Shown: piece by piece, positions 4,440-42,689 of the stretch
Numbering within the stretch: the stretch's first letter is position 1
Layout: each line of letters starts with the position of its first letter
From: Octopus sinensis
Taxonomy: Eukaryota
Reading direction: 5' to 3'
DNA: 64,000 nucleotides
Assembly (NCBI RefSeq): GCF_006345805.1
Contig: NC_043000.1
Location: 17,670,001 to 17,734,000 of the forward strand
Program-made: the position numbers and the translations under genes
The notes under the pieces: model-generated
Seen by the model: only the letters and a program-made list of their open reading frames with translations
Database searches by the model: none
What the model was told of the DNA's origin: nothing

Positions 4440-5330
4440 CTTATATCCTCATCAGTTACATATAATCTCTGTAGATGTTGCCAATGTTAGTTCCTCTAAT
4501 TGTATGTGAAACATTGGGCAGCAGCAAAAGATCTCCATCTTCTGTGGTCTTCTGCAAGAGATTTGGCATCCTTCCAGCTCTTCTGCATCTAGATCCTTCA
4601 GAACTATCCTCTTCTATGTTATTTATGGGTGTCCACATTTCCTTTTCCCACCTTCTGGCTTTTTTCAATCAAGGGAGAGCTTTAGGTGACTTGTTGATGG
4701 TATTTTAAAGACGAAAAGGTGGCGAGCTGGCAGAAACGTTAGCATGCCGGGCGAAATGCTTTGTGGTATTTCGTCCACTGCTGCGTTCTGAGTTCAAATT
4801 CCGCTGAGGTCGACTTGGCCTTTCATCCTTTCGGGGTCGATAAATTAAGTACCAGTTACGCACTGGGGTCGATATAATCGACTTAATCCGTTTGTCTGTC
4901 TTTGTTTGTCCTCTCTGTGTTTAGCCCCTTGTGAGTAGTAAAGAAATAGGTATTTTAAAGACATGTCCAAGAAACCTCAGACAACGATCTTTCACTGTTA
5001 TACACAGTGGTTTCTGCTTAGTTCCCCCACAGACTTCTTCATTGGTTATTCTGTTCTGCCAAGAGATGTTAAGAAGCTTTTCAGAAGCACTTCTAGTGGA
5101 ATACATTGAACTTATGGAAAAGTCCTGTTTAAGTAGCATATATGGTGACGGGGACCACCAAAGAATTGTACAAAACTATCTTGCTTCTTAGAGTCATCTG
5201 ATTAGATTGCCAGATGTTTCTTAGCCTTCTAAAGACAGAGCCTGCTTTTCCAATTCTGCTCAGCATGTCTTGCTCTGCATCACTCCTGTTGGAAATGTTG
5301 CTACCCTAACAGATGTACCTCTCAGTTTCA
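4440..5330 (-). mobile_element. RTE-type LINE ORF2 3' remnant interrupted by a family D SINE
   Basis: Minus-strand LLNISWQNRITNEEV...KDRCLRFLGHVFK, then GGKRKCGHP*IT*KRIVLKDL after removing the SINE. Confidence 0.75.
4713..4948 (+). mobile_element. Family D tRNA-like SINE (head aaggcggcgagctggcagaa, tail aaagaaata); further copies at 8590-8828(-), 28594-28830(+), 40743-40972(-), 53439-53654(+), 55519-55752(+), 62957-63136(+, variant tail)
   Basis: B-box-like GAGTTCAAATTCC; 14-bp TSD ggtattttaaagac at 4699-4712 and 4949-4962; TSDs also visible at other copies (e.g. tacagctatttct 8577-8589/8829-8841). Confidence 0.9.
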
Positions 5331-7739: not shown

Positions 7740-7806
7740 ATGGATAATAATGTTGAACAGATGAACATGGATAATTCTTTAATGGCTCAATTAAAAGGTA
7801 TTAAAG
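7740..7806 (+). CDS. Candidate first coding exon of an unidentified host gene (MDNNVEQMNMDNSLMAQLKGIK, ends phase 1)
   Basis: ATG at 7740 preceded by in-frame TAA; open to a consensus donor AAG|GTAAGT at 7806/7807; possible upstream acceptor ctatattacag ending 7669; not within a recognisable repeat. Confidence 0.45.
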
Positions 7807-9765
7807 GTAAGTAGTGTTTTGGTGATTATTGCTAAATCTCACATGTCTTTAATCAGATGAACTGCTGTGGCAAAGTTAACACTTCACTCACCTCTTAAGT
7901 GTATAAGATTAGGGTTATACATGTATGGTTTGGTTTTAAAGCACCATCCGTTTGTGGCCGTTGCCAGCCTCCCTTGGCCCCCGTGCCGGTGGCACATAAA
8001 ATGCACCATCTGATAGTGGCCATTTGCCAGACTCGTCTGGCACCTGTGCTGGTAGCACGTAAAAAGCACCCACTACACTCACGGAGTGGTTGGCGTTAGG
8101 AAGGGCATCCAGCCGTAGAAACATTGCCAGATCAAACTGGGCCTGGTGCAGCCTTCTGGCTTCACAGACCCCAGTTGAACCGTCCAACCCATGCTAGCAT
8201 GGAGAACGGACGCTAAATGATGATGATGATGGGCCAGAAATATGGAGCTTAGTTTTAACTTGTGCTAACTTGGATCATCAGTCTTTGTTTTACTTCATGG
8301 AAACTAGGAGACAAGTTTAGTTTTACTTTGGAATATTGATGGAATGAATTTTTCTTAGTGCTGTTAACATCATGTTCATTATCAATGGTACTGTTTGTTC
8401 AGTTTCTGTACATGTTTTCAAAACATATTAGGTCAGAATTGAACTCTCAAACTTGTACTTCACGCAGTGTTCCAATTTGTTGCAGCCTCCTGGCTTCCCA
8501 GACCCCAGTTGAACTGTCCAACCCATGCTAGTATGGAAAGCGGACATTAAACGTTGATGATGATTAGACTTAATAATACAGCTATTTCTTATTTCTTTAT
8601 TGCCCACAAGGGGCAAAACATAGAGGGGGACAAACAAGGACAGACAAAGGGATTAAGTCGATTACATCAACTCCAGTGCATAACTGGTACTTTATTTATC
8701 GACCGCGAAAGGATGAAAGGCAAAGTCGACCTCAACGGAATTTGAACTCAGAACGTAACAGTAGATGAAATTCCGCTAAGCATTTCGCCCAGCGTGCTAA
8801 CGATTCTGCCAGCTCACCGCCTTTCAGCTACAGCTATTTCTAGCAGAGTGAACAACTGTACAGAAGCCCTTTCATGTTATTACTTAGCTTGATGAAGTGA
8901 GGTACTGTTCATAACCTTCTTTGGCCTTCTCAGGCTGCTGAAATTAATGCAGCTGATGTTCAGCATAAGCTTCTACAAATCAGTGTCATCTCTGTCTTCA
9001 ACTCAAAACGGTCACTGCATACATCAAGAAGAAAATCTTGTTTCTTGCCCTCTCTAGAGCTTAGGCAACATGCAATTAAAACACTCAACATTGTTAAAAA
9101 TACAAAGCCACATAATCACTGACAATGTCATCCAATGATTTCACATTGGAAACAGAATAAAAACAGTCCTAAAGACCTGCTTTGTTCTTCAGATCCAGGG
9201 AATATATCAGCTCTAAACAGTCATTAACTTTCTAAAAAGACCGAATAATACTTGGAATGGAGTATTGTTCCCAAATCTGAGAAGATACTGCTCTTACAAA
9301 TACAAACATTCTAGTCTGCATCCAACAAAAATCTAATTACCAAAGACTAACTCTGCAGCACACTTCAATCACTGTCCTGGACATGTGTTTTTCTATTCTG
9401 CAATTTCTTCTGCTATTAGAAAAGTTGCTGTTTCTCAGAAATAGTTGGTTGCATACCACCTCCACCTAAACCTACTGGAAACAACTGTCTTTCTCTCTCC
9501 TACCACTGAAACACTGTCACTCTTCACCCCAGGATTAACTGCTATACCTATTTTCTTCCTTGCTAAATTATTAACCATCTAGAATTCCCTTCTGTTCAGT
9601 ACTTTTCAACAGTAGTTGACTCGCAGTTGAACATGAACAGCATCAATTGTGCCAGCTTTGGAGCCCTATTGTAGATGTGGAAGTAATATTCCATTGAGAC
9701 CTTCATTTATGTTTTGTAGAGGTGTTGGGGCTGAATAATGATAATTGTTGGGGCTGAAGTATCTT

Positions 9766-10166
9766 CTTATTTCTTTATTACCCACAAGGGGCTAAACATA
9801 GAGGGGACAAACAAGGACAGACAAAGGGATTAAGTTGATTACATCGACCCCAGTGCGTAGCTGCTACTTAATTTATCGACCCCGAAAGGATGAAAGGCAA
9901 AGTTGACCGTGGCAGAATTTGAACTCAGAACGTAACGGCAGATGAAATACCTATTTCTTTACTACCCTCAAGGGGCTAAACACAGAGAGGACAAACAAAC
10001 AAGTACAGACAAATGGATAAAGTCAATTATATCGACCCCAGTGCATAACTGGTACTTATTTAATCAACCCCAAAAGGATGAAAGTTGACCTCAGCAGAAT
10101 TTGAACTGAGAACGTAGTGTCAGACGAAATACCACTAAGCATTTTGCCCGGTGTGCTTAACGTTTC
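9766..10166 (-). mobile_element. Family D SINE dimer
   Basis: Same junction (plus strand gaaatacc|tatttc) at 9951/9952. Confidence 0.8.
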
Positions 10167-10714
10167 TGCCATTACAAAGTTGGTCCTTGTTACAATGTGG
10201 TGGCTTGTGCACCACAATGACCATGAGAGCTATGTCAGTGGTGCATAAGCTCCTTGTAGGGCCTCCTATGCTGAACAGGTCAAAGGATAGAGACCAGACT
10301 AATATGGATTACCTCTTCCCAGAGGCAAAAATAGGTTTTCATAGGGCCAACACCCTTATTTAGAAAAAAAAAGCAAAGTTACAGAGGTGTTGATAACAAT
10401 TCAAACCCAACAAATTCTGGGAAAAGAAGGTCTTTTCTTAGGGAAACATGCAGGATAAAAGTTTCCTTCCTGAATCATACCAACTCATAAAGGCTGGTTT
10501 CCTGGTTTCCATGGCATACATATATTCCCCACTCATCACTGGATTATGCATTTTTGCCAGTTGAGCAGACTTGAGCAACATAAAACGAAATATTTTGCTC
10601 AAGAACACAACATGTAGCTTGGGCCAAGAATCGAAACCACAATCTTATGATCATGAGTCCAACACTCTAACCACTTGGCCACACACCTCCATAAACATGC
10701 AGGATGCTGAGGTA

Positions 10715-10825
10715 GAGTTGAAAAAACAGGGATCAACTAGAGAGAAGCTGAAAAACAGCCCAGAGTTGAGAACAGAAGAATCATTGGTGGCCTACGCTTT
10801 GTAGAAAGTGAAGGGCTTAAGTAAG
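10715..10825 (+). mobile_element. RTE LINE extreme 3' end
   Basis: Degenerate C-terminus ending gaagggcttaagtaag, a (TAAG)-type tail. Confidence 0.45.
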
Positions 10826-11470
10826 AGAAGAGCCAGTTGCTGAGCTGTGGTTCTAGCTATGTTAATGATGTTAGGTCTCCCTAAAGATCCTTCTTAGTTT
10901 GGCCAAGAGAGATCCTTAGAGATAGTGAGACCCAATATTTCAAGCAATCATAAAGAATTTAGTTACTTCTGGTGTACTGTTGCTCATTTATCTTTGCCAT
11001 GACTTGATTATATCTTTGTTGAAGCTTGATTATCTTTCCTAAGATTCACTTTTAGTTTGTGAGTCCTGTTTTATCTGTACAGAGCTTGATTCATCTTTGC
11101 TGAGCCATGTCTATCTTTACTAAGCTTCACTTATCTTTGTTGAGTCACACTTATTTTTGTTAAGACTAACTTACTTTTGTTGAGCTTATTTCTCTTATGT
11201 GATACTAGCTTGTCTGAGGTTTAATTTATTCATTTATTTATCAGGTTTATTTGTTTCTTTTTCCTTCCTACAATTTCAGTAATTATCTGATTGCCTTTTC
11301 CTTTCTTTCTTTCTTTTTTTTTTTGTTAATCTTTGAAATACCAAAACAAGGCTGTGGGCACTGCATGCTCTTGATCAATAAAATGAAATATTCTCTCTTC
11401 TCTCTCACCTGCTTTTTCTCTCTCCCTTTCACATAGGCATACATACTCATACAGAAACACAAGGAAACAT

Positions 11471-11517
<47 letters not shown>

Positions 11518-11641
11518 CAGTATATATATTCAAACACAAACAAACACTTCCACTATACACATGCATAGACATTCTATGTATGAAACACATGCTGACATAC
11601 GCGTACCCCTTTACACACACACACACACATATGCACACACA

Positions 11642-11672
<31 letters not shown>

Positions 11673-11935
11673 CACTTACACATTTACATAGGCGAAGTTT
11701 AGTTTGTCCAACTGTAATACAGTCAGACCAAGGAAAGCTTGTTGAGTGAAAAGAATGTCTATGTGTGAACATATTCTTTAAACATTACACAATATGTCCT
11801 AGTTCATTGGATTAATTGAACCAATGCCACAGAGACACACACATATACATATTTACTGCAATATGTACATATATTTATATATATATACACACACACACAC
11901 ACACCATATGCACATACATACATACATATATACAT

Positions 11936-12346
11936 AGGCGCAGGAGTGGCTGTATGGTAAGTAGCTTGTCTACCAACCACATGGTTCTGGGTTCAGTCCC
12001 ACTGCGTGGCATCCTGGGCAAGTGTCTTCTACTATAGCCTCAGGCCGACCAAAGCCTTGTGAGTGGATTTGGTAGACGGAAACTGAAAGAAGGCCATCGT
12101 ATATATGTATATATATATATATGCGTGTGTCTGTTTGTGTGTCTGTGTTTGTCCCCCTAGCATTGCTTGACAACCGATGCTGGTGTGTTTATGTCCCCGT
12201 TACTTAGCGGTTCAGCAAAAGAGACCGATAGAATAAGTACTGGGCTTACAAAAGAATAAGTCCCGGGGTCGAGTTGTCGATTAAAAGGCAGTGCTCCAGC
12301 ATGGCCACAGTCAAATGACTGAAACAAGTAAAAGAGTAAAAGAGTA
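11936..12346 (+). mobile_element. Family C tRNA-headed SINE with internal (TA)/(CA) microsatellite and (AAAAGAGT)n tail; other + copies about 21665-22070, 24066-24400, 31819-32220, 34546-34980, 46687-47099, 48241-48666
   Basis: Head aggcgcaggagtggctgtgtggtaag...gggttcagtccc, near-identical across copies; 3' end gactgaaacaagtaaaagagtaaaagagt. Confidence 0.9.
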
Positions 12347-12605
12347 TTCGTATAGTTGTGTATATGTGTTAGAGTATGTATCTGTATGTATATGAGTCGG
12401 TATACATTTTGAAAGATATGTATGTGCATATATATGTAAGTGTGCAAATACAAATATTTGTATATAAATGTGTCTATAAATGCATGTGTGTGTTTGTGTG
12501 GTGTGGGTGATGTGTATGTGTGTGTGTTGTATTACAGTAATCAAAGGAAGAAGTTCCCATGAGACTTTCTACTAATATTTTTGTTCCTCTTTTTCACCTC
12601 AATAG

Positions 12606-12657
12606 TTTACAGCTTTCTTGAAAGGAAACAGTCACAGTTCAGAACCAAGTTCCACTG
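12606..12657 (+). CDS. Candidate coding exon 2 (V)YSFLERKQSQFRTKFH(W/C), phase 1 to phase 2
   Basis: Long pyrimidine tract ttttgttcctctttttcacctcaatag| at 12605/12606, donor CTG|GTAGGA at 12657/12658; open in the phase left by the 7740-7806 exon. Confidence 0.45.
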
Positions 12658-13168
12658 GTAGGATACAAGCATCAGAAATTCTAATTTTTCATTGCTGTTT
12701 TGCTTATTAATTAAAGTGATTCTTGAGAGTAACACTGCGGTTGAGCGGAAATTGAAGTGGAACATTGCAAACTGGAGCAGACTTGGGTCAATAAGAGAAA
12801 CAAATATTAGTTAGTGAAATTTGTGGGGGAAATTTAGCTGCTATATATCTAACAGGTTGAATGAAGAAGTGGTGGCTTGAATGTGGGAACATAGACAAAA
12901 TTATATGTTTTTAGGACCTCGTGTTTGCTGGTGTGGACGTTTCTTCTTGAATATATTAAATTGGCAGACATCTCATTTCTTTGTCATCTCTTCCATGAGG
13001 CTCAACATTCTGAGGTGAGTCTTCACTACTTCGTCTCATGTTTTCCTGCTCTCTCTCTTCCACAAGTCCCATCCACATTTACAAACCATCTCTTCTTTAA
13101 GCAGCTGTTTTTATCCATACACGTGCATGACCATACCAGCACAGTCTTCTCTTTTGTATACTACATCT

Positions 13169-13384
13169 TATTTCTTTACTGCCCACAAGGGGCTACATAC
13201 AAACGGATTAAGTCGATTATATCGACCCCAGTGCATAACTGGTACTTATTTAATCGACCTCGAAAGCATGAAAGGCAAAGTCAACCTCAGTGGAATTTGA
13301 ACTCAGAACGTAGCGACAGACGAAATACCACTAAGCATTTCACCCGGCGTGCTAACGATTCTGCCAGCTCGCCGCCTTTTTCAC
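13169..13384 (-). mobile_element. Family D SINE directly downstream of the 5S copy (same insertion)
   Basis: Head GAAAAAGGCGGCGAGCTGGCAGAA, tail CCCCTTGTGGGCAGTAAAGAAATA; 5S plus SINE flanked by ttgtatactacatct at 13154-13168 and 13504-13518. Confidence 0.9.
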
Positions 13385-13502
13385 GCTAACAGCACCTAGG
13401 CTTCCCAAGCGATCACCCATCTAAGTACTAACTAGGCTCGATGTTGCTTAACTTCGGTGATCGAACAAGAACCGGTGCTTTCAACATGATATGGCCGTAA
13501 GC
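13385..13502 (-). rRNA. 5S rRNA: Full-length 5S rRNA copy, probably a retroposed pseudogene
   Basis: Minus strand reads GCTTACGGCCATATCATGTTGAAAGCACCGGTTCTTGTTCGATCACCGAAGTTAAGCAACATCGAGCCTAGTTAGTACTTAGATGGGTGATCGCTTGGGAAGCCTAGGTGCTGTTAGC (118 nt) with the metazoan 5S layout and box A/box C; transitions in loop C and box C, no oligo-T terminator. Confidence 0.95.
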
Positions 13503-14949
13503 ATTGTATACTACATCTGATAACTCTCATGCTCAGTTTTTTCCTCTCTAAATGTTTGCACTTTGTTGCATAAGCATACTGACACTGCACATCCAGCAAA
13601 GCATGCTTTCTTCATCTGTTTCTAGTTCTCACATATCCTCTGCATGCACAGCCCATATTTCACTACTAAGTTGCATCACTGTTTGTACTCAAGCATCAAA
13701 CAGTCAGCCTTTCACTCTGTGAGAGAAACCTTTCATGGCCCACAGTTGTAACAGCTTTCTGAACATTATCCATCCTGTGTTTATTCTAGCAACTATGCTT
13801 TTAGAACTTCCTTCTCCACTGTTAATTAGGTCACCTAGTTAATGAGTGTAAAATGTTCAACTTCACATTCTTTAGAGAACAATGTGAGAATGACAGTGGC
13901 CCAAAGACAATTTGAACTCCAGTAAGAGAGATTTGCACAGCATTTTACAAATGAATTTCAAATAAAGGAATATGGACAATTTCCTGGCATATCTGGTCTG
14001 GCATTGCTACAGATTGGTGTATCCAGTCTGAAATAAACTGTACAGGCATACACAGGTCCTGCATACACCTATATGTGGTTAAGATTCATCATGCCCTTGC
14101 ACTTCTATATGTAAGCATAGGTAAATTTTTAAAGGAAGATGGGTAGTTGCCAATATATACAAGCCTTCTTCGTCCTGCCACTGATGTTTATCTAAGTCAA
14201 AGGCTGCTGACTTTGACTGATGCTACTCGACACCAGTGTCATTGCAGGCTTTCTTGTCAAAGAGCTGGAAGAGATACTACTGAGCATCTGACTCAGCTCT
14301 CTAACAGTTTTGTATAGAGAGAAGAGACTTGGCAGTTGCCTATACATGCAAGTTTCTTCTCTCTGTACCACTGATATCAATCCAAGGGAAAGGCTACCGA
14401 CTTGGGTTGATACAGCATATGGCTTGGCATTGATATTGGTGCAGGTTTTGCTGTCAAAATGCAAAGAGCTGAAACAGATACCTGAAGGAATGTTGCTCAA
14501 CACTCTAATGGTTTCATCAATTAATCAAGCTAAATTAGTGCTTTTTTTTTTAATAATCCTGAAAGGAATTTAAACTCATAGTGTAGTGAGTCAAAATAAA
14601 CTGGCATACTAGTAAAAAAAACACTTGGAAATGGCTGAGTTGTGAGGAATGGAGAAGCCAGCCTTTAAGCCATCCTCCAAGTAAATGTTACACACCTGCC
14701 TGTAGAACTCTTACTGTTATCTGAGACCATTACTATTCTTTGAAAAGGATTGGTCATGCAGTATTTCTCTGCTTAATAACAACAGTACAAACAGTGGTCC
14801 AGAGAATGAGATAGATAAAACAAGGGTAAACATTTTTTCCCCTATGCCAATGGAAACATTCATCTCATTTAAATATCTTCTATCCAAGGAGAAGGAAGAG
14901 AATGGGGAAAAAAATCTGTTCTCATAGTATTATGCCTAGTATAAAAGAG

Positions 14950-15374
14950 GGATCTTTTCGGTTTGAACGGCAGTTTTTTAAAATAATTTCCACATAACTA
15001 AGCACTTTTAAACTTCATATACTGGTAGTATGTGTTTATAAAACATCTTTTTCTCTTGGCTTTATTGAGAAAATTCTATAGCTTGTAAGATATTTGTTGT
15101 TTTTTCTCTTCAATTTCTGCAATTTCAACCAATCAATGACCGTCTATTGAGGTGAAAACATTCTGTGCCGTATGAATATGTCCCTCGTTTAAGAAACAGA
15201 TTGGGTTTATTTACATTTCTGAAGAAAAAAAGATACCCTTCCCCCCCACCCCTAACCCTAACCCTAACCCTAAAACAGATTGAAATGCAATAGATCGATA
15301 CTAGGGTCATAATTATGGGTGACAATTTCATATGACACTGCTAGAAAAAACTGCCGTTCAAGCCGAAAAGATCC
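14950..15374. mobile_element. MITE with ~28-bp TIRs, 8-bp TSD and internal (CCCTAA)4
   Basis: TIR ggatcttttcgg(t/c)ttgaacggcagtttt; TSD taaaagag at 14942-14949 and 15375-15382. Confidence 0.85.
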
Positions 15375-15734
15375 TAAAAGAGATTTCTGCTTCATTAATA
15401 ATGGTAAAATATTACAATTCATTTCCCATTCTTTAGATCTTTAACATTCAGATTACTCTGTCTTACTTATTCACATTGTTTTGAATTAATTATGCATTAT
15501 CTCTTGGCTTTGAGATTTGAATGATACGAGTGTTTATTCTAAGACTGACTTTGTAGGGTAGGTGTGAGAAGCCAGATCTGGTCAGTTTAAACATAAAACA
15601 AACAGAATATTTGAGCCAGATATGGCCAGTTTAAATGTTAAAGGGTTAATAATTTCGAAGCAGCTAAAGCTTTTTATTCAAATTGAAATACAACTCTTTT
15701 CCTCCATATTACTACATACTAATATATTTACAGA

Positions 15735-16125
15735 CTAGCAGTATCGCCCGGCGTTGCTCGGGTTTGTAAGGGAAATAACTATATAAGCATTTTTAGAGAT
15801 GTAAAGTATAGTAGCCATCTCAATATGGCTAACCACAAAGCGGGGTGTTACTGTAGCTTTTTACGTTCTGAGATTTAATAATAAACTTTTAGAGAGTTAC
15901 TTCCCTTATATATGCCAAAAATGCATTAAAAATGGGAAAAATTGATGGCAAATTTTTTTTAAATCGTAGACTCATCGTAGACGCGCGCTAATATCCAGAA
16001 GGGCTCGATATGAATCACGACTATAAGATACCCGCTTTTGGTTAAACTGCACCGCAAAATGTGGGAGTAGTTAGGAATCTAAATCGTAGGAGACAGACAT
16101 ACAACTTCACTTTTATATATAAAGA
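15735..16125 (-). mobile_element. Non-autonomous Helitron
   Basis: Minus strand begins A|TC at 16126/16125 and ends with hairpin cccgagcaacgccggg then CTAG|T at 15735/15734; no TSD. Confidence 0.8.
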
Positions 16126-16489
16126 TATATCAATGTGTCTACAGTAGTGTTCTGAAAGAAATGGATGTGTGTTACACTAAGTTTCAATATTTATTTTTGT
16201 CTCTCTGTATTTAAAGTTGAAATCCAGTCAGGGTTTACTGTATCTTTTATTGTTCTCGGTTTCACAAAATGTGTATCAGTTATGCTCAAGAATTTTCCAC
16301 TCCCTATATTTTTTTGTTCTCAAGCGCAGGTTTGGCTGTATGGTTAAGAAGTTTGCTTCCCAACCATTTGGCCTTGGCTTCAGTCCCATTGTGTGGCACT
16401 TTAGGCAAGGGGCTTCTATTATAGACCTGGGCCAACCAACGCCTTGTTAGTGGATTTGGTACATGGAAACTGAAAGAAGCCTGTTGCAT

Positions 16490-16523
<34 letters not shown>

Positions 16524-17661
16524 ATGCATGAGTGATATGCATGTGTGTGTACCCTTGCTTTGGCATCACACAATGGTTGTAAACGAGCACCACTGTCATA
16601 CAAGTAATGTTGTTAATTTCCATTCTGTCAAGAAAGCCATATCTGGCCATGGGAAATATTCCCTTGCTTGGAAATAGGAAAGGCACCAAACCTTAGAAAG
16701 TATACCTCAAAATATTTTGTCTAACTCATGAAAGTATGAAAAATGGACATTAAAATGATGACAACGATAGTGGTGGTGATAATGATGATGATAATGATGA
16801 TGATGATGATATATTCCAAAAATTACAATAATTAAAGAGTTTTCCTCTTTATAGGCTTGATCTTTTATAATCAACCCAACAGATAATCACTACCTGATGT
16901 TGTGGCATTCATGTATTTTCTAGGTCGTGATGATTGCTGATGCAGTCAAAACACATTGCTAGATTAACTATGGCAACTACCGCATAACCTTGAGCCAAAG
17001 TAACTTCTGACTTCTAGGTGGTCACGACTACCATCAGTACCGTTAGCGCCATATTCATGATTACCTCTACTACCATTATCATCACAAACAGCACCACTAA
17101 TTAACAATATTCTTTTGAATTTTGGCAGAAGGCTGGCAATTTTGAGGGGAGGGGAAGACAGTTACATCAACCCCCAGTGCTGAACTCCTACTTATGCTAT
17201 CGACCCAGGAAGGATGAAAGGCAAAGTTAGCCTCAGTGGTATTTGAACTCAGAACATAAAGAAACAGAAGAAATATTGCTAAGCATTTTGTTTGGTGTGG
17301 TAATGGTTCGGCCAACTCACTGCTTTATTGTATCACCAACGAAATCATCATCACCATCACCATCACCATCATCACCCTCACCATCATCACACCACTTTAA
17401 CTACCCCTAACAGTTAATGACCTATGATATTAGGCCATCTTAAAGCCACTATCAATACCACCAGCACCTAGAATATATATTGATTTAAAATTTTGGCACA
17501 ATTCCAGCAATTCCAAAAGCAGGGCAAGTCAGTTATATCGACTCCAGTGCACAATGGTTCTTGTTTTATCGACCCCAAAATGATGGAAAAGTTGACCTCG
17601 GTGGAATTTGAACTCAGGACATGATGATGCCGCTAAGCATTTGCCCAGCATGCTAATGAGT

Positions 17662-18078
17662 CTTATTTCTTTATTGCCCGCAAGGGGCTAAACATAAAGG
17701 GGACAAACAAGGACAGACAAAGGGATTAAGTCGATTGCATCGACCACAGTGCGTAACTGGTACTTAATTTATCGACCCCGAAAGGATGAAAAGCAAAGTC
17801 AACCTCTGCGGAATTTCAACCTAGAACGTAACGGCAGACGAAATACCTATTTCTTTACTACCCACAAGGGGCTAAACATAGAGGGGACAAACAAGGGCAG
17901 ACAAAGGGATTAAGTCGATTGCATCGACCACAGTGTGTAACTGGTACTTAATTTATCGACCCCAAAAGGATGAAAGACAAAGTCGACTTCGGCGGAGTTT
18001 GAACTCAGAACGTAGCAGCAGGTGAAATACCGCTAAGCATTTCGCCTGGCATGCTAACAATTCTGCCAGCTCTCTGCC
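17662..18078 (-). mobile_element. Family D SINE dimer
   Basis: Same junction at 17847/17848. Confidence 0.8.
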
Positions 18079-19414
18079 ATCCCAGGAACATATATTAATT
18101 ACTATCTCTCTCCAGCCATTAATTGTCACCGCCCATCACCACTGGCACCACCACCACCAACATCATCATCATCATCATCATCACCATCATGACCATCCAT
18201 TACTGTTACCAATATCACTATTGGCATTGTTAGGCATTGTTACCAACGCCAACCCCACCATGACATCCAACACCATTGCCCTCACGCTACTACCATCATT
18301 GTTTCCACCTGCACTCTGACAGCCATCATCATCACTAACATCGCAACCAATACCACCATCACCACCATCACCACCTCCACTACTCTTGTTGCCATCATCC
18401 CCCACCACCACTACCACCACCACCAACACCACCATCATCATTGGCATCTCCTCTCCCTACCCTAACCCCACCATTACCACCATTACCATTACCATTATCA
18501 TCACTACCATCATCATCATCATCATCATCTCAACCTCCAGCCTAGTCACATCATTGTCACCACCAGCTAAACCAATGCCACCACCACCACCACCACCACC
18601 ATCACCGCCACCACTACCACCACCATCACCACATATAGGGTGAAGTTGTCAGCGATATTTCAACTATGTTGTTTGTTATACGATCTGGTGAACAGATGAA
18701 AACTGTTTTAGAGAATATGATATAGTGCTTGGTGTGTTGGTAGAGGAGGTCATGGGGGGAATCGTTGATGGTAGGGAAGAGGAAAGAGACAAAGAAATGG
18801 AGCATTTATTATTTCATTATTGTCTGAGACTGACTAGCAAAATACCTTTTGGTATTTAGATACACCTCTTTACATTCTGGGTTCAAATCCAGCTGAGTAT
18901 GGCTTTGATTTTTCATTTTTTTTTTTTTTGCTGGGTCGATGGTTTATGTAAGAATTTTGACTTGTGTGGTTAAGAATCTTGTTTTGCAACCATGTGGTTT
19001 CAGGTTCAGTCCCACTGTGTGGCACGTTGGTTATGTGTCTTCTAAATATGGCCCCCAAGCCAAACAATGCCTTTCAAGTGAATTTAGATGATTGGAAACT
19101 GTGGAAGCCTGTAATATATGTGTTTGTGTGCACATGTGTGTATGTGTATGTGTGTGTATGTGTGTGTGTGTGCATGCATGTGTGTGTGTGTCTTTGTCCC
19201 TCCAATTACCACCACCACCACTACCACCACCACACCACCACCACCACCACCACCACCACCACCACCATTACCAAAGTTGCTTGACAACCAATGTGGGTTT
19301 CTTTATGTCCCATAACTTAGCAGCTTGACAAAAGAGACCAATAGAATAAGTTTCATCATCATCATTGTCATCATTGTCATCATCGTCGTCGTCATCGTTA
19401 TCATTATCATCATT

Positions 19415-19449
<35 letters not shown>

Positions 19450-19954
19450 TTAACAACTATTTTCCAAGAGAACGATAGAATAAGTACTAGGCTTACAAAG
19501 AATAAGTCCTGGGATCGATTTGCTCAACTCAAAGCAGTGCTCCAGCATGGCCACATGGGTTGGATGGTTTGACAGGGGCTAGCAGCCAGAGAGCTGCACC
19601 AGACTCCAATTGTCTGTTTTGGCAAGATTTCTCAGGCTGGATGCCATTCCTAATGCCAACTACTATATAGAGTGTCCTGGGTGGAACCATCACTAGTGCT
19701 TTTTTACATGGCACCAGCACCCACACCAGTGCTTTTATGTGGCATTTGGTTTTAGGATCTCAACTCTGTCGTGATGAATGGGTTTTCTCAAGTACAGCAC
19801 TGCACCACGTATCTTGGTGCTCCGTCGTAAATATATGGAACACACAAGCTTTAAAAACACACAAGTACTAGGGTTCATTTGTTTGACTAAACCCTTTAAG
19901 GCAGTGTTTCTCAACCTTTTTACCCTTGCGTAACCTCAGAAATTTTTCCAAGCT

Positions 19955-22217
19955 GAACTATGTGACCTTGTCAAAGACCTGTCCATCTCAAAAGATAAAG
20001 CAGAACTGTTGGCATCAAGACTGAAGAAGTATCAGCTAGAGCACAGTGTTCGTATAACTTATTTTTGGCAGAGAAATATGGTTCTAGATGGATGGAAGCA
20101 CTCCATCGGTTACGACGACAAGGGTTCCGGTTGATCCGATCAACGGAACAGCCTGCTCGTGAAATTAACGTGTAAGTGGCTGAGCATTCCACAGACACGT
20201 GTACCCTTAACGTAGTTCTCGGGAATATTCAGCGTGACACAGAGAGTACAAGGCCGGCCCCTTGAAATACAGGTACAACAGAAACAGGAAGTAAGAGTGA
20301 GAGAAAGTTGTGGTGAAAGAGTACAGCAGGGATCACCACCATCCCCTGCTGGAGGCTCGTGGAGCTTTTAGGTGTTTTCAATCAATAAACACTCACAACG
20401 CCCGGTCTGGGAATCGAAACTGCGATCCTACAACCGCGAGTCCGCTGCCCTAACCACTGGGCCATTGCATCTCCAATGGTTCTAGAAATGTGTTCTGTTG
20501 AAGGCTTGCTTTACTTTTGCAGTAACATCGATGGACTTTTCAAATGTTGATCACGAAATCATGATCCTGCAGGGTGATGTTTGTTTATTGACTCTCCAAA
20601 ACGAAGTTTAAAAGCTGTACTTCTCCATAATGGTAATTTGAAGCCCTCCATTCTTATTGCACACTCCATTTATCTTCATGAATCATATGAGAATATGGAA
20701 CTTTTATTTCATGCCATTGCCTATGAAAGACGCTCACGGAAAATATGTGGAGATTTACAAGTCATTGGAACATTAACGGGAATGCAGTCAGGTTTCACAA
20801 AATACTGTTGTTTCTTGTGTCTATTGGGTAGTTAGGCAACTGCATGACATTACTCGGAATCAAACTGGCAGACAAGAATATCATACCAGCCTGGACTGTC
20901 TAGCTTCAAGAATACATCTCTTGTAGATCCATGTAATGTCCTGTTGCTTCCTTTGAACATAAAGTTTGGACTGATGAAAGTTTATAAAGACACTAGGGAA
21001 GAGAAATTCCAAAGGGTTTGAGTATATTGTAGAAAAGTTTCCCAAAATCACACAGGCGAAGTTGAAAGAGGGTATCTTTGTCAGACCCCAAATTAGAGAA
21101 ATACTCAAATATGACAACTTCAAGACAGCACTAGATGAACTGGAACTGCCTGCCTGGAATGCTTTCAATTGGATCTGTGAGAATTTCTTGGGAAACAAGA
21201 AGGCCATAAGGATGACATCAAGAATCTTCTGAAATGTTACTCAGCATTGGGTTGTCACATGTCACTGAAAGTTCACTTCTTGGACTCCCATCTGGATTTC
21301 TTTGCAGATAACCTTGGAGCAGTGTCTGATGAACATGGTGAAAGATTTCACCAGGATATTAGTGCTATGGAGAAATGGTACCAAGGCTTCTGGAATGACA
21401 GTATACTAGCTGACTACTGCTGGACACATTACTGCGATCAGTCAGATAAGGAACACTGCAGGAAATCCAAATCAATATGTTTCTAACACTGTTGTTCTAA
21501 CTTTATCTGTTTTGCCTGACCCATTTTTTGTGTGTTCACTCTATGTAGAATGATGGTGATGATTTTTAACTCAATAAACTCATTTACTTTCTAAAAATAA
21601 TATGTCCTTATTTATTATGTTAATGATTTCATATAAATACAAGTATATACAAATATTGTGAAAAAGGCATAAGAGTGGCTGTGTGGTAAGTAGCTTGCTT
21701 TCGAACCACATGGTTCCGGGTTCAGTCCCACTGCATGGCACCTTGGGCAAGTGTCTTCTACTATGGCCTCAGGCCGACCAAAGCCTTGTGAGTGGATTTG
21801 GTAGATGGAAACTAAAAGAAGCCTGTTGTGTATATGTATGTATATATGTATATGTGTGTGTATATGTTTGTGTGTTTGTGTTTGTCCCCACCAACATCAC
21901 TTGACAACCGATGGTGGTGTGTTTACGTCCCCATAACTTAGCAGTTCGGCAAAAGAGACCGATAGAATAAGTACTAGGCTTACAAAGAATAAGTCCTGGG
22001 ATCGATTTGCTCGACTCAAGGCGGTGCTCCAGCATGGCCACAGTCAAATGACTGAAACAAGTAAAAGAGTATGTAAATATTTGCATGTGTCTTCTGAAAA
22101 ACTGATACATGTTGCATACAAATGGAGTGAAGTTTTGAAATCAGCATGAAAAATAAGTCCAAAAATGTTGGTTTGCATTCATAATGAGTATAATATATTG
22201 AATTTTGTTGACCAGTG
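19955..22217 (+). mobile_element. Decayed CMC-group (Chapaev3-like, RAG1/Transib-related) DDE transposon, 5' truncated, two SINE insertions
   Basis: LCDLVKDLSISKDKAELLASRL, FIDSPKRSLKAVLLHNGN, ICGDLQV, KYCCFLC, KLKEGIFV, SLKVHFLDSHLDFFADNLGAVSDEHGERFHQDI; in-frame stops and frameshifts; probable right end ttttgttgaccagtg at 22217. Family label is from recall. Confidence 0.75.
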
Positions 22218-23401
22218 TAATCAAAGATATTCCAGCTGTGATCATTGCCCTTTCTTGTTTAAAGAAATAATATATCCAAAACCACAGCAAGCATTCAATG
22301 TGTCCTGTTTCAAGATGCCATGCTGTAATTTGAGGGTGATTTGGTTGTCATTTCTAGCAGTTGAAGCAACTATATAGAAGCTTCATTTTTGGCCTGTGAT
22401 CTAACAATGATGACAACGGTAATGATGACAAAGATCCAGATGGTGATATTTTTATATATTTCTATTGAAAAGTGTGAAGGTACATAGCTCAGAGGTTAGA
22501 GTGTCAGGTTAATAATAACGAGGTAGTAAGTTTGATTCCCAGACCGGGCTGTGTTGTGTTCTTGAGCAAGATACTTTATTTCATGTTGCTCCATTTCACT
22601 CAGCGACAGAAATGAGTTGCAACATCACTGGTGCCGAGCTGTGTTGGCTTTTGCTTTTCCCTTGGATAACATCAGTGGCATAGAGAGGGGAGGCTGATAT
22701 GCATGGGTGACTGCTGGTCTTCCATAAACAACTGCCTGGACTTATGCCTTGGAGGGTAACTTTCTGGGTTCGATCCCATGGTCATTTATGACTGGAGAGG
22801 ATCTTTACCCTTTATTGAAAAGAATCCTTAGTCTGTAGTCATTCATACTCTGGCACTGCCTTCTTGGGTATAGACCATTACATTGACCCACTCACAGACT
22901 GTTATATAAACTTTGGAAAGATGAAAGGTAATGCAGACATGGGGGAAATTTTACACTTAGAACATATAGGGATCTAATTACATTCCAAAAAGTATAATGT
23001 TATATACACTAGCAACATTCCCCCCACATCATTATTATCATCATCACCATCATCATTTAACATCTACTTATCTAAGCTTGCCGGGTTTAGATAGAATTTG
23101 TTGAGGCAGATTTTCTTCAGCTGGATACACTTCCTGTTGCTTGTCCTCACCTGTATCCAAGTATGATAATATTTTCCTGTAGAAGACTGGAAACAAATGG
23201 CATTGCTTGTATGACAGTGATGCACGTTTTACAACCATCTTATGCTGTCAAGACAAGGGTACAAACAGTCACACAAACACACACAGATGCATACACACAC
23301 ATGTACACACATATATGTATGTATGTATGCACACATGCATACAAATATATGAGGAGTATATATATATATATATATATATAACCACTAGGCCATTGCGCCT
23401 C

Positions 23402-23487
<86 letters not shown>

Positions 23488-23536
23488 CCACAAGGCCATT
23501 GCACCTCCACACACACACACCACACACACACACACA

Positions 23537-23608
<72 letters not shown>

Positions 23609-23610
23609 AT

Positions 23611-23656
<46 letters not shown>

Positions 23657-23741
23657 ATATATATATCCTTAAAAAAATCCTTAAAAATGTTTTAGCCCGA
23701 AGGCCGCGGCCATGCTGGGGCACCATATATATATATGTGTG

Positions 23742-24050
23742 TGTGTGGAGGCGCAATGGCCTAGTGGTTAGGGCAGCGGACTCGCGGCTGCAGGATCGCG
23801 GTTTCGATTCCCAGACCGGGCGTTGTGAGTGTTTATTGAGCGAAAACACCTAAAAGCTCCACGAGGCTCCGACAGGGGGTGGTGATCCCTGCTGTACTCT
23901 TTCACCATTTTTTCTCTCACTCTTTCTTCTGTTGGCCTGCTCGCTTAGCCAGCGGGGTGGCGTCATTCGAAGGCTAAAACAATGCGAACACATTGTGACC
24001 AGCGATGTGTAATAACATCTGATGGTCTGGTCGGTCACGTGATCACGTGA
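23742..24050 (+). mobile_element. Family A head with alternative tail Y; second copy 52131-52444
   Basis: Same head as 5383-5769, diverges after ctttctctcactct into a tail ending gtcacgtgatcacgtga; both copies flanked by (TA)n. Confidence 0.85.
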
Positions 24051-25380
24051 TATATATATATAATGTGCAGGTGTGGCTGCATGGTAAGAAGCCTGCTTCC
24101 CAACCAGATGGTTCCTGGTTCAGTCCCACTGTGTGGCACCTTTGGCAAACATCTTCAATGACCTTGGGCTGCCAAAACCTTGTGAGTGGATTTGGTAGAT
24201 GGAAACTGAAAGAAGCCTGTCATGTGTGTGTGTGTTTGGGTCTGTGTTTGTCCCTAACACCACTTGACAACTAGTGTTGGTGTGTTTATGTCCCTACAAC
24301 TTAGCAGTTTGGCAGAGAGACCAATAGAATAAGTACCAGGTTTAAAAAGAAAGAAAGAAAAGAAAAAGTGTTGGGGTCAGTTCATTCAGCTAAAAGTCCT
24401 CCGTCAATGTGTGTCGGCCAGCACGAGGAAAACCTTCATCTGCAACACGTGTGCAGTGTTCAGGTTAAGCCTGGAGTGCGTGCTCACCACCAAGGGCAGC
24501 CACAGTGATTAATATTAATATCTAAACACATATTTATATGTTAAAACAATAAAAACATGTCTAACTACATCAAAACTCTCACCGTGTCCTTTGTCGAGAG
24601 CGTTGTAATGAGTGTAACAGGACTTTTGCAAAGCTTGGTATATATAATAATAATAATAATATTAACGTGATGTAAGAACTATTACATGTCAATGTGAGAA
24701 CTATTACTACCCATGTATTTTAATTTAACTTAAAAAAAAAAAAAATGAACGAATTATTGAGTTTAGTTTAATGGCCTACCAATGTATACTATGAATTTCT
24801 TTGCCCTAGGAGTCGGGAAGACACTCGGCAAGAAATGGAAGCAAATTTGAAAGAAGAAAAAAAAAAATAATAATATTAGGGAGTATAACTCCAAACTTAC
24901 AGGGAAAAATTTAATTTAGTATTAAATCAAATTTCACAATATAAATATATAAAATATAAATTTATATTATATATTATATATATATATATATGCAACAGGC
25001 TTCTTCAAGTATCTGTCTACTAAATCCACTCACAAGGTTTTGATCATCACAGGGCTGTATAGTAGAAGCCATTTGCTTAAGGTGCTGTGCAGCGGGATTG
25101 AACCCCAGGCCACACTTGCACCTACTGTTTAAAATTGTCAGATTATATATCACATAAAATATTTGTAGGGAGAGCTCATTATGATGTTTATGTCCTGTTG
25201 AGAAATATAAAACCAAAATATTATGTTGAAGGCTTCTGAATTTTGATATCAGATAAGGACCAGGATATTTTACAAGTAGCTTTTAGATGATCTTTGGTTA
25301 TCCTTGATAGTGATTCTTTATTGTTCTGACCACTCTAGAAGCAAGAGCTATGTCATTAAAATATTTTTTATGGTTTAAGG

Positions 25381-25721: not shown

Positions 25722-26597
25722 GTTTCAGGTAATAGGTGGAAGAAGATCAAATGTATAAGGCATTTAGCAAGCTGCTCTTATTGTTTGGGAGTTTGAGTCG
25801 GCAGTTTGTATGCGTTTGGCTGCATTTCTGGAGAGGACATTATGTTGTACAGTACTTTGGTTTATTTAGAAGTCCAGGGAGAAAAGATAGCATAGTACCA
25901 AGGAATATTATCTGCGATAGACCGGTGTCCTAATCAGAGTGATATTTGTCTTATAATATGATAAGCAACTTAAAATTAGGAACTAAGAGAGAAAAAAAGA
26001 AGATAGACAGAGAGAAGAATAGCATATAGAGAGAGAAGGTGTGAAACAGAGAAAGAGAGAGAGAGAGAAAGAGTAGGGGAGAGACTCCACAAAGAAAAGG
26101 CAACAGACATCAAGATGAAGAGAGAGAAATATAGGAAGGGAAAGAGACAGCAATGCACGGAGATAGAGAAAGAAGCAAACATAGAGAGAGGGAATAACAG
26201 TGATAATTCATTAGACAGAGAGTAAAAGACCGAGAGAAAGACAGAGAGAGAGAGAGAAAGAAAGAGAGAGAGAGAGAGAGAAAGAGAGAGAGTTTGTGTG
26301 CATGTATGTGTGTAAGAGAGAGAGGGGAGGAGAGAAATGTATAAGGGCAAATGAGAGAAAGATAATAGAGACAGATAAGAGAACGAGAGAAGAGAAGTAG
26401 ATGATGATGAGGAAGTTGACGATAGAGATGATATTGATAATAGGGATAGCGATGGCGGCGGCAATGATATTGATGATGATGATGATGATAATGATGATGA
26501 CGACGATGATGATGATGACGATGACGATGATGATGATGATGACGATGATGACGACGACGATGATGATGATGATGATGATGAGGACGATGATGAGGAC

Positions 26598-26648
<51 letters not shown>

Positions 26649-27498
26649 GATGATGGTAGTGGTGGTGGTAGGGACAATGCTGTTGATGATGGTGACGATG
26701 ATGATGATGACGATGATGATGACGATGATGATGATGATGATAATGATGATGATGATGATGGTGATGGTGATGGTGATGATGATGACGATGATGATGGAGA
26801 TGATGGTAGTGGTGGTGGTAGGGACAATGCTGTTGATGATGATGATGATGATGGGGGGGCCTAGTGTTTGTGGTGGTAATGGTTGTGGTGGTGGTGACTA
26901 TTTGAACAATAAGGACAAGTGTTAGTGGTGATGCTGATTGCTGTCTTGGTAGATGATGATGATGATGATGATGATGATAGTGTTGTTGTTGTTGTAGTTG
27001 TTATTGGTGGTGTTGGTGGCAATAGGGGTCTTTATCTTATTTCTGGAATGGTGGAGTGGCGGGGGGGGGGGCATGCAGGGGGGCAGGGGGAGCTGGACTC
27101 AGTACTAAGAGTCATTTCAAGAATGTCTGTTTGAGTTTAAAGCCTTGAACAGTCTGTTCTGTAGAGCATTTATTATGTGTTAGACCCAAAACATTTTTCC
27201 TTAAAATTCCTGTCAGTAAGTAAATAAGTGTAGCAAAAGTCACATTACTCAGCAATTTCAAGGTTTCAAATGTTGGAAAGAAAAAAATAAACAAAAAAAA
27301 AAAAAAGGAAAAAAACCCCAACAAAACAGAAAACATTCCAATGGAAGGTGTGGTATACCTCACTGTCTTTGGTGAATCCTTGTAGAATATTTAGTCTTTA
27401 ATTATCTCCAAAACACTCCTTATAGTCTCAGAAGTACTTTATTTATTTCTTAGAGGAAATATTTTCTCTTTAGTAGCTTTTAGTTTTTATTTATCTAT

Positions 27499-38226: not shown

Positions 38227-38289
38227 TGTATACACATATTGATTTGGGATGAGATATATATTAATATTTCATAAATACAAACCACAACT

Positions 38290-38765
38290 TGCTCTCTCTC
38301 TCTCTCTCACACTCATTCCTTCTCTCTCTCTCTTTCACTCATTCCATCTTTCTCTCTCTCTCTCTCTCGCATCTCTCTCTCTTCGTCTCTCTCCTCTCAT
38401 CTCTCTCTCTCCCATCTCTCTCTCTCTCATCTCTCACTCTTCTCTCTCTCTCTCTCTCTTCTCTCCCTCTCTCATCTCTCTCTCTCTTCTCTCTCTCTCT
38501 CATCTCTCTCTCATCTCTCTCTCTCACTCATCTCTCTCTCTCTCTCATCTCTCATTCTCATCTCTCTCTCTCATCTCTCTCTCTCATCTCTCTTCTCTCT
38601 CAGCCTCTCTCTCATCTCTCTTTCTCCATCTCTCTCTCTCTTCATCTCTCCTCTCTCATCTCTCACTCTCATCTCTCTCTCTCTCTTCTCTCATTCTCAT
38701 CTCTTCTCTCATCTCTCTCTCATCTCTCTCTCTCTCATCTCTCTCTCTCATCTCTCTTTCTCTCA

Positions 38766-38796
<31 letters not shown>

Positions 38797-38970
38797 CTCT
38801 CACTCTCATCTCTCTCTCTCTCTTCTCTCCCTCTCTCATCTCTCTCATCTCTCTCTCTCTCTCATCTCTCTCTCTCACTCATCTCTCTCTCTCTCATCTC
38901 TCTCTCTCATCTCTCTCTCATCTCTCTCTCTCTCATCTTTCTTTCTCTCATTCCTCTATCTCTCACTCTC
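38290..38970. repeat. Imperfect (CT)n/CAT polypyrimidine tract
   Basis: Direct reading. Confidence 0.95.
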
Positions 38971-42537: not shown

Positions 42538-42570
<33 letters not shown>

Positions 42571-42689
42571 CATCATCATCAACAACATCATCATCATCAT
42601 CATCATCATCAACAACATCATCATCATCATCATCATCATCCACATCATCATCATCATCATCATCATCATCCACATCATCATCATCACCA

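What the first reader, a model, noticed from the sequence alone, without database searches (positions are those of the whole stretch)
13154..13518. 5S rRNA fused to a tRNA-type SINE and retroposed as one unit (15-bp TSD)
Seen: a complete 118-nt 5S sequence runs, with only about 1-3 nt between them, into the intact head of a family D SINE in the same orientation. The pair is bracketed by ttgtatactacatct (13154-13168, 13504-13518), and removing it restores the RTE frame it interrupts, so this was a single insertion event. There is no 5S terminator. Known: 5S-headed SINE3 families and template-switch chimeras (U6-L1 type) exist in other animals. Inference: either a one-off template switch from SINE RNA to 5S RNA, or a 5S/tRNA double-promoter SINE subfamily that I do not recall being described in octopus. 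Helix pairs ATGTTG/CAACAT and CCTAG/CTAGG remain complementary although they differ from the usual metazoan sequence, so they may reflect the source gene.
Basis: partly seen in the sequence, partly recalled or inferred. Interest (0 to 1): 0.75.

Follow-up and report, generated by a model that had tools for sequence, protein, structure and literature searches.

The report
5S rRNA–SINE chimeric retrocopy in octopus
A full-length 5S ribosomal RNA copy joined to a complete octopus SINE was pasted into an old LINE fragment in one retroposition event; this kind of template-switch chimera is already known in other animals, and whether this one ever multiplied could not be tested.

Summary
On the minus strand of the window (Octopus sinensis CM016862.1:17,670,001-17,734,000) the order is:
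- a 15-bp target-site duplication (TSD), 13518-13504
- one extra T
- a full-length 5S rRNA, 13502-13384 (Rfam 104.6 bits)
- TGAAAAA
- a head-to-tail 'family D' SINE, 13376-13169
- the same 15-bp repeat, 13168-13154

No inner TSD exists. No T4 terminator follows the 5S for 602 nt.

Other family D copies carry 0-15 nt leaders between TSD and head, mostly ending in AA. The copy sharing subfamily substitutions with the focal SINE has the leader GAAAA. So TGAAAAA is most simply the SINE RNA's own 5' leader, with the 5S joined almost directly to it.

Both halves look similarly aged. The SINE has about 6% non-CpG divergence, and the 5S has about 5-6 private transitions at otherwise conserved positions.

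Best reading: during target-primed reverse transcription of a SINE RNA, the LINE reverse transcriptase jumped onto a 5S rRNA. The same model is proposed for vertebrate 5S/tRNA SINE heads, moth HaSE3 and human 5S/U6-L1 chimeras.

One-off versus amplified subfamily is undecided, because no octopus genome could be searched. A 2026 O. vulgaris annotation lists four uncharacterised 'SINE/5S' families (9.8 Mb), which keeps the subfamily reading alive at about 0.35.

The parts
13504..13518 (-). 5' target-site duplication (AGATGTAGTATACAA on the element's strand)
   Evidence: Exact 15-mer present only twice in the window. It directly precedes the 5S apart from one extra base.
13503..13503 (-). One extra T between the TSD and 5S +1, an untemplated or unexplained junction base
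   Evidence: Direct reading.
13384..13502 (-). Full-length 5S rRNA copy (119 nt), with no terminator
   Evidence: RF00001 at 104.6 bits, model 1-120. All helices are kept except U4.U. Nine positions differ from five intact 5S genes that agree with one another, and 7 of the 9 are C>T or G>A.
13377..13383 (-). TGAAAAA linker, most likely the 5' leader of the SINE RNA
   Evidence: Other family D copies have 0-15 nt between TSD and head, and 6 of 8 leaders (counting the focal one) end in AA. These include GAAAA (c4718) and GCTGAAA (c8821). c4718 shares subfamily substitutions with the focal SINE.
13169..13376 (-). Complete 'family D' SINE: head GGCGGCGAGCTGGCAGAA..., box A-like 13366-13356, box B-like 13304-13292, tail ...GTAAAGAAATA; has a 24-nt internal deletion
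   Evidence: 91% identity to the window consensus over positions 1-182 and 96% over 205-231. Alignment with six other copies. Divergence is 6/36 at CpG sites and 11/172 at other sites.
13154..13168 (-). 3' target-site duplication
   Evidence: It directly follows the SINE tail.
12950..13153 (-). Host on the 3' side: degraded LINE-like ORF2 C-terminal region (KRRLCWYGHARV..., then ...GWDLWKRESRKT.DEVVKTHL after a frameshift)
   Evidence: Conceptual translation of the empty site. Motif-level only: Pfam and the homologue search were negative.
13519..13838 (-). Host on the 5' side: the same degraded LINE-like reading frames (...ARINTGWIMFRKL...EESMLCWMCSVS...LSMRVI)

Best explanation
This is a chimeric retrocopy made in one retroposition event. 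I lean to it being a single, non-propagating event.

Proposed mechanism:
1. A LINE reverse transcriptase began target-primed reverse transcription on the 3' tail of a family D SINE RNA, at a nick in an old LINE fragment.
2. It copied the SINE to its 5' end, including a short TGAAAAA leader.
3. It then jumped onto the 3' end of a 5S rRNA and copied it to nucleotide 1.
4. Second-strand synthesis produced the 15-bp TSD.

The copy has since decayed by roughly 4-6% and has no terminator of its own.

Shown: the anatomy, the single TSD, the completeness and shared orientation of both parts, that the TSD and tail resemble those of ordinary copies of the SINE, and the similar decay of the two halves.

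Inferred: the template switch itself, which LINE did it, and that the event was unique.

The confidence of 0.55 is for the one-off reading. I hold the shared core, a single retroposition of a template-switch chimera, at about 0.9.
For: - A single exact 15-bp TSD flanks the whole unit, and no inner repeat flanks the 5S alone or the SINE alone.
- The 5S is full-length from +1, and it is the 5' partner in sense orientation.
- The SINE is complete to its tail. The focal TSD (15 bp, starting AG) fits the 10-18 bp TSDs starting AG/GG of six of the seven other window copies whose TSD could be found, which points to the same machinery.
- TGAAAAA fits the 0-15 nt leaders of plain copies, mostly ending in AA. 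Copy c4718 has leader GAAAA and shares substitutions 64T>C, 157G>A and 173C>G with the focal SINE.
- The halves have equal age. The SINE has 6/36 CpG-site and 11/172 other differences, about 3.5% private. The 5S has about 5-6 private transitions at positions invariant in five intact 5S genes.
- The same SINE forms dimers at a fixed junction (tail joined to position 48) three times in the window. One of them (41804-42224) is flanked by a single 18-bp TSD, so its two parts entered as one insertion.
- The template-switch origin of 5S/tRNA SINE heads and of small-RNA chimeras is the published model (PMC4824008, PMC4758252, PMC3272025, bioRxiv 10.1101/2025.02.02.635956).
- None of the other 8 head-bearing copies in the window carries any 5S sequence.
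Against: - Uniqueness is untested. No octopus genome could be searched, and 66 kb is far too little to exclude a family.
- An O. vulgaris repeat annotation lists four 'SINE/5S' consensus families covering 9.83 Mb, or 0.35% of the genome (PMC13282606, Suppl. Table 1). That density would predict about 220 bp of such sequence per 64-kb window, close to the 335 bp seen here.
- The missing terminator would let a 5S-promoted transcript read through the SINE, as a double-promoter family would need.
- In human 5S/L1 chimeras the 5S part is usually truncated and antisense, unlike here.
- The 5S lacks the usual 3' U residues at the junction.
Confidence: 0.55

Rival explanations
1. The element is one copy of an amplified composite SINE subfamily: a 5S head plus an intact tRNA-type SINE, giving two Pol III promoters. 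The family would have been founded by such a template switch and then propagated from master copies.
For: - Four 'SINE/5S' families covering 9.83 Mb are listed for O. vulgaris, the closest relative (PMC13282606). The implied density fits one copy per roughly 100 kb.
- No terminator lies between the 5S and the SINE.
- The leader of plain copy c8821 (GCTGAAA) resembles the focal GC(G)TGAAA(AA), which spans the 5S end and the linker. That would fit descent from a composite master.
- Composite dimers of this SINE recur with one junction.
- 5S/tRNA-SINE chimeras did become families in vertebrates and in a moth.
Against: - There is only one junction in the 66 kb held. None of the 8 other heads has 5S sequence upstream.
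- The 'recently active' 5S class in that paper is 7 insertions totalling 42 kb, about 6 kb each. That looks like 5S rDNA arrays rather than SINEs.
- The 9.8 Mb may also include plain SINE copies matched to a composite consensus. The families are not described in the paper.
- Retroposed 5S promoters are thought to be weak without upstream signals (PMC3272025).
- This copy has three changes in the box C region (5S positions 81, 91, 95).
Confidence: 0.35
2. Two independent nested insertions: a 5S retropseudogene and a SINE landed next to each other at different times.
For: The AAAAA after the 5S could be read as a short A-tail.
Against: - A second insertion would have made its own 10-18 bp TSD. 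None flanks the 5S alone or the SINE alone. The longest string shared by the SINE's two flanks is a misplaced 6-mer.
- The 15-bp repeat sits exactly at the outer ends.
- The A-rich stretch matches the leaders of plain SINE copies.
Confidence: 0.03
3. 5' transduction: at a source locus a SINE had inserted just downstream of a genomic 5S gene or pseudogene. A 5S-promoted read-through RNA was then retroposed via the SINE tail.
For: No terminator lies between the parts. The 5S is complete from +1.
Against: - The source SINE's own 5' TSD (10-18 bp) should lie between the 5S and the SINE, but only 7 nt are there, and they look like an ordinary leader.
- 5S genes are followed by T runs, not GTGAAAAA.
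Confidence: 0.04

Closest known systems
Vertebrate Deu-SINEs with composite 5S + tRNA heads (AmnSINE1 group; Nishihara, Smit & Okada 2006, as cited in PMC4824008 and PMC4758252)
   Same: A 5S rRNA sequence is fused to the 5' end of a tRNA-derived SINE. The proposed origin is a reverse-transcriptase template switch from SINE RNA to 5S rRNA.
   Different: [quoted passage not shown] Here both modules are complete, only one copy is known, and the host is a cephalopod.
HaSE3 of Helicoverpa armigera (PMC3272025)
   Same: A 5S head joined to the body and tail of a co-resident tRNA-derived SINE (HaSE1) that shares its tail with an RTE LINE. It is interpreted as a template-switch chimera and is flanked by TSDs.
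   Different: HaSE3 replaces the tRNA head, whereas here the tRNA-type head is retained intact behind the 5S. HaSE3 is found in several copies and species.
Human small-RNA/L1 chimeric retrocopies (U6-L1, 5S-L1; Buzdin 2003; bioRxiv 10.1101/2025.02.02.635956)
   Same: They are single-event insertions with one TSD. A Pol III small RNA sits at the 5' end and a retroelement 3' end at the 3' side. Each is usually unique and non-propagating. As in U6 chimeras, the small RNA here is full-length and in sense orientation.
   Different: The 3' partner here is a whole SINE with a non-poly(A) tail, so a non-L1 LINE is implied. Human 5S-L1 chimeras are mostly truncated and antisense.
'SINE/5S' class in the O. 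vulgaris repeat annotation (PMC13282606)
   Same: The genus is the same, and the class label fits a 5S-headed SINE-like repeat.
   Different: Only counts are published (4 families, 9.83 Mb), with no sequences or structure. The class may be 5S rDNA arrays. Its relation to this element is untested.

Membership tests
Template-switch chimeric retrocopy (small RNA + retroelement) | Two unrelated RNA-derived parts joined in one orientation and flanked by a single TSD | tested here: met
   Exact 15-bp repeat at the outer ends only. No inner TSD.
Template-switch chimeric retrocopy (small RNA + retroelement) | The 3' partner keeps the 3' end used for priming by the LINE enzyme | tested here: met
   The SINE tail ...GTAAAGAAATA is intact. 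TSD length and start match plain copies.
Template-switch chimeric retrocopy (small RNA + retroelement) | Each chimera is a unique event that is not amplified | not testable with these tools
   No octopus genome is searchable. There is one junction in the 66 kb held.
5S-derived SINE (SINEBase definition, PMC3531059) | At least 60% identity to 5S rRNA over at least 60 nt at the 5' end | tested here: met
   Full-length RF00001 match at 104.6 bits.
5S-derived SINE (SINEBase definition, PMC3531059) | [quoted passage not shown] | not testable with these tools
   The length of 335 bp fits. Copy number is unknown. The only hint is the uncharacterised 'SINE/5S' class in O. vulgaris.
5S-derived SINE (SINEBase definition, PMC3531059) | Diagnostic substitutions shared among copies but not with the cellular 5S gene | not testable with these tools
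   Neither other copies nor the O. sinensis 5S rDNA could be obtained.
Functional 5S rRNA gene | Pol III terminator (T run) directly after the gene | tested here: not met
   GTGAAAAA follows the gene. The first T4 run is 602 nt downstream.
Functional 5S rRNA gene | Conserved internal control region (box C) | tested here: inconclusive
   Substitutions at 5S positions 81, 91 and 95, where five intact 5S genes are invariant. No octopus reference or assay was available.
tRNA-derived SINE ('family D') | Head recognisable as a tRNA | tested here: not met
   ARAGORN found none in the window. There was no Rfam tRNA hit at E<=10. Only box A/B-like motifs were seen by inspection.
tRNA-derived SINE ('family D') | Multi-copy interspersed element with TSDs | tested here: met
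   18 matching segments in the window, belonging to about 14 copies, 9 of which have a complete or nearly complete head. TSDs of 10-18 bp.

The most novel reading that the evidence does not exclude
The element belongs to an amplifying 5S + tRNA-type double-promoter SINE subfamily of Octopus that has been listed only as a class, never characterised. It would have been caught at the earliest stage, with both modules still complete, and mobilised by a non-L1 LINE that recognises its own tail. That would make it the first characterised 5S-headed SINE in molluscs and a living intermediate of the route proposed for vertebrate 5S/tRNA SINE heads.
Probability: 0.3. Interest if true: 0.5.

Novelty: new member of a known kind. 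Interest (0 to 1): 0.35.

Why it matters
The element is a clean, fully interpretable snapshot of step one in the published model for how 5S-headed SINEs arise. It has a complete 5S, a complete SINE with its leader, one TSD, and no later trimming. It sits in a lineage (cephalopods, with non-poly(A) LINEs) where such chimeras have not been described in detail.

If it is a one-off, it is a modest curiosity. It would show that octopus LINE reverse transcriptases jump onto abundant Pol III RNAs as L1 does.

If it is one of many copies, it would explain the uncharacterised 'SINE/5S' class in Octopus annotations. It would also offer a natural test of whether a retroposed 5S promoter can drive SINE amplification.

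Tried and rejected
- **Metagenome scan for the junction.** The pattern GGTGCTGT-N{3,30}-GAGCTGGCAGAA was too loose.
- **SINE-head scans of viral and prokaryotic genome collections.** Both returned zero hits, so these collections hold no octopus DNA and a junction search there would mean nothing.
- **Protein search with the antisense translation of the composite.** It found only 5S-antisense ORFs from other organisms and one distant SINE-like Logan contig (L121/L122, 73% identity to the SINE). The window's own ORF was not in the collection.
- **Protein search with the stitched host LINE peptide and Pfam on the three host frames.** Neither gave a hit, so 'RTE' stays unverified.
- **Search for a second copy of the host LINE in the window as an empty-site control.** None was found.
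- **Attempt to harvest more octopus DNA through homologues of a transposon-like ORF.** Only P0011 was from Octopus, and it simply returned the window's own locus (L123). The Tara contigs lack the SINE.
- **Rejected: structural conservation of the 5S as evidence of selection.** All in-helix private changes are C>U opposite G or G>A opposite U, which keep pairing automatically. By my rough estimate, four of four tolerated has p of about 0.09.
- **Rejected: AAAAA as a poly(A) tail of a separate 5S pseudogene** (see rival explanations).

Full report
**Source of the window**

A transposon-like ORF at 21181-21483 matched an Octopus sinensis protein (P0011, LOC118762843). The locus encoding that protein, L123, is 100% identical to window 1-34512. 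The window is therefore O. sinensis GCA_006345805.1, chromosome CM016862.1, positions 17,670,001-17,734,000. The feature lies at 17,683,154-17,683,518. It sits inside the range of that gene model (window 7740-24512, + strand) and is antisense to it.

**Checking the observation**

Rfam finds one gathering-level hit in the whole window: a full-length 5S rRNA on the minus strand, 13502..13384. It scores 104.6 bits at E 7e-22 over model positions 1-120, with one non-standard pair.

Read on the minus strand, the order is:

| Feature | Coordinates |
|---|---|
| AGATGTAGTATACAA | 13518-13504 |
| T | 13503 |
| 5S rRNA | 13502-13384 |
| TGAAAAA | 13383-13377 |
| SINE, head GGCGGCGAGCTGGCAGAA... to tail ...GTAAAGAAATA | 13376-13169 |
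| AGATGTAGTATACAA | 13168-13154 |

The 15-mer occurs only at these two places in the window. Only 0.03 matches are expected by chance, even allowing one mismatch.

The SINE head 28-mer recurs at six other sites and the box B region at fifteen other sites. A consensus search gives 18 matching segments, belonging to about 14 copies. The focal copy is complete at both ends but lacks 24 nt internally.

There is no T4 run on this strand until 602 nt after 5S +1, beyond the element.

- The element is on the minus strand.
- The 5S is 119 nt.
- 7 nt lie between the 5S and the SINE head.
- One extra T sits at the 5' junction.

**The host**

Removing the insert and one repeat copy gives an uninterrupted minus-strand reading ...ERKKLSMRVIRCSIQKRRLCWYGHARV..., in which the repeat encodes RCSIQ. 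I recognise the surrounding degraded frames (...EESMLCWMCSVS......RESRKT.DEVVKTHL...) as the C-terminal region of LINE ORF2 proteins.

This recognition is from my own knowledge only. Pfam finds nothing in the three frames, the homologue search finds nothing, and no second copy exists in the window. 'Frame restored' is therefore shown, and 'RTE' is not.

**The 7-nt linker**

For eight other head-bearing copies I looked for TSDs and found them for seven.
- The TSDs are 10-18 bp. Six of the seven begin AG or GG directly after the tail.
- Between the 5' TSD and the GG of the head there are 0-15 extra nucleotides: GAAAA, GCTGAAA, TGGTATCTAA, CATAA, a 15-mer ending TTAA, or none.
- Counting the focal element, six of eight leaders end in AA.

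The focal TSD (15 bp, AGATG...) and the focal TGAAAAA fall within these distributions.

Copy c4718 has leader GAAAA and shares three non-CpG substitutions with the focal SINE: 64T>C, 157G>A and 173C>G. The simplest reading is that TGAAAAA was the 5' leader of the SINE RNA of that subfamily, and that the 5S is joined to it with 0-1 nt in between.

One loose end remains. The leader of c8821, GCTGAAA, resembles GC(G)TGAAA(AA) spanning the 5S end and the linker. With six comparisons this could be chance.

**One event or two**

A second, later insertion would carry its own 10-18 bp TSD. None flanks the 5S alone or the SINE alone. The 15-bp repeat sits exactly at the outer ends.

The two halves also look equally old.
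- The SINE differs from the window consensus at 6 of 36 CpG-site positions and at 11 of 172 others. About 6 of those 11 are private, or roughly 3.5%.
- The 5S differs at nine positions where five intact 5S genes agree with one another.
  - Positions 3 and 116 change together, so that a C-G pair becomes U-A. Positions 102 and 103 may be lineage features.
  - Positions 36, 39, 81, 91 and 95 are all C>T or G>A.
  - With the separate U4.U mismatch, that gives about six likely decay changes in 119 nt.

This is what co-insertion followed by neutral decay predicts.

**The 5S itself**

The five reference 5S genes come from marine metagenome contigs (L124-L127). There they sit beside U1, U2, U3, U4 and U5 genes, so they look functional, though their organisms are unknown.
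ATGCTG/CAGCAT is present in L125 and in one of the two L127 5S genes.
- The CCTAG arm is also present in L124, where it pairs with CTGGG.

The preservation of pairing in the focal copy is not evidence of selection. Every private in-helix change is C>U opposite G or G>A opposite U, and those changes keep a pair automatically.

Three private changes lie in the box C region (81, 91, 95), so the 5S promoter of this copy may now be impaired. This is an inference with no assay behind it.

**Mechanism**

The anatomy matches the published template-switch model.
- Composite 5S + tRNA SINE heads in vertebrates are explained by a switch from SINE RNA to 5S rRNA (PMC4824008, PMC4758252).
- HaSE3 in Helicoverpa is a 5S head on the body and tail of a tRNA SINE that shares its tail with an RTE LINE (PMC3272025).
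- Human L1 makes single-TSD chimeras with U6, 5S and other small RNAs, which usually do not propagate (bioRxiv 10.1101/2025.02.02.635956).

The octopus case differs in three ways:
- The acceptor RNA is copied whole and in sense orientation.
- The donor is a whole SINE.
- The tail is not poly(A), so a LINE that recognises its own tail is implied.

Such LINEs would not normally copy a free 5S RNA. That would explain why the 5S appears only as a passenger.

The window itself may show the same kind of jump. Three copies are dimers with the same junction, tail joined to position 48 at a shared GGTAT. One of them is flanked by a single 18-bp TSD.

**One-off or subfamily**

This is the open point. 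The junction occurs once in the 66 kb I hold, and none of the 8 other heads has 5S sequence upstream. No collection available here contains octopus DNA, and my one metagenome scan was wasted on too loose a pattern.

Against a confident 'one-off' stands the 2026 O. vulgaris repeat annotation (PMC13282606). It lists a SINE class '5S' with four consensus families and 9,831,953 bp, or 0.35% of the genome. That density would predict about 220 bp per 64 kb, close to the 335 bp found here.

The same paper's 'recently active' 5S entries are 7 insertions totalling 42,242 bp, about 6 kb each. That looks like 5S rDNA arrays. The class also comes from an automated pipeline (RepeatModeler2, AnnoSINE) and is given no description.

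My estimates are:
- one-off chimera: about 0.55
- member of an amplified composite subfamily: about 0.35
- other origins: under 0.1

The statement common to the first two, a single retroposition of a template-switch chimera, I hold at about 0.9.

**Verdict**

The finding is real and correctly interpreted. It is a new example of a known kind of event rather than a new kind of element. Interest is moderate to low unless the genome-wide junction count shows a family.

Noticed in passing
window 41804-42224 (+), 18078-17664 (-), 10171-9768 (-): Three family D SINE copies are dimers with the same junction. A full unit is followed directly by a second unit starting at consensus position 48, joined at ...AAAGAAATA|GGTATTTCG... 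One of them (41804) is flanked by a single 18-bp TSD. This is either a quasi-dimeric subfamily or recurrent microhomology-guided template jumps.
   Followed up: partly
window 4713-4717, 8822-8828, 28594-28603, 40970-40974, 55507-55521: Plain family D copies carry 5-15 extra, non-duplicated nucleotides between the 5' TSD and the head, usually ending in AA. This suggests Pol III starts upstream of the head in source copies, or untemplated addition. Most TSDs begin AG or GG (often followed by TA or AA), resembling the SINE tail, which suggests microhomology at priming.
   Followed up: partly
window 7740-24512 (+); ORF 21181-21483: The annotated gene LOC118762843 (uncharacterised protein, 130 aa) spans this range. 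Its matching exon is a transposon-like domain with over 1300 homologues across animals and metagenomes. The 5S-SINE element lies within the gene range, antisense.
   Followed up: partly
L124, L125, L126, L127 (marine metagenome contigs): Intact 5S genes are tightly linked to U1, U2, U3, U4 and U5 genes on short contigs of unknown marine eukaryotes. The gene caller had predicted 'proteins' on the antisense strand of the 5S.
   Followed up: no
window 25976-26925, 38249-40408, 42259-42963 and many (CA)n / (TATG)n tracts: Long low-complexity tracts give spurious ORFs of 140-380 aa (poly-Ser, poly-His, His-Thr repeats). No intact protein-coding ORF other than the transposon-like fragment was seen.
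   Followed up: no
window 62956-63084 (+): A SINE with the same head as family D has a deletion of consensus positions 29-67 and a different 3' body and tail, flanked by a 12-bp TSD (TATATATTGCTA) abutting the head with no leader. This is a second family sharing the head module.
   Followed up: no
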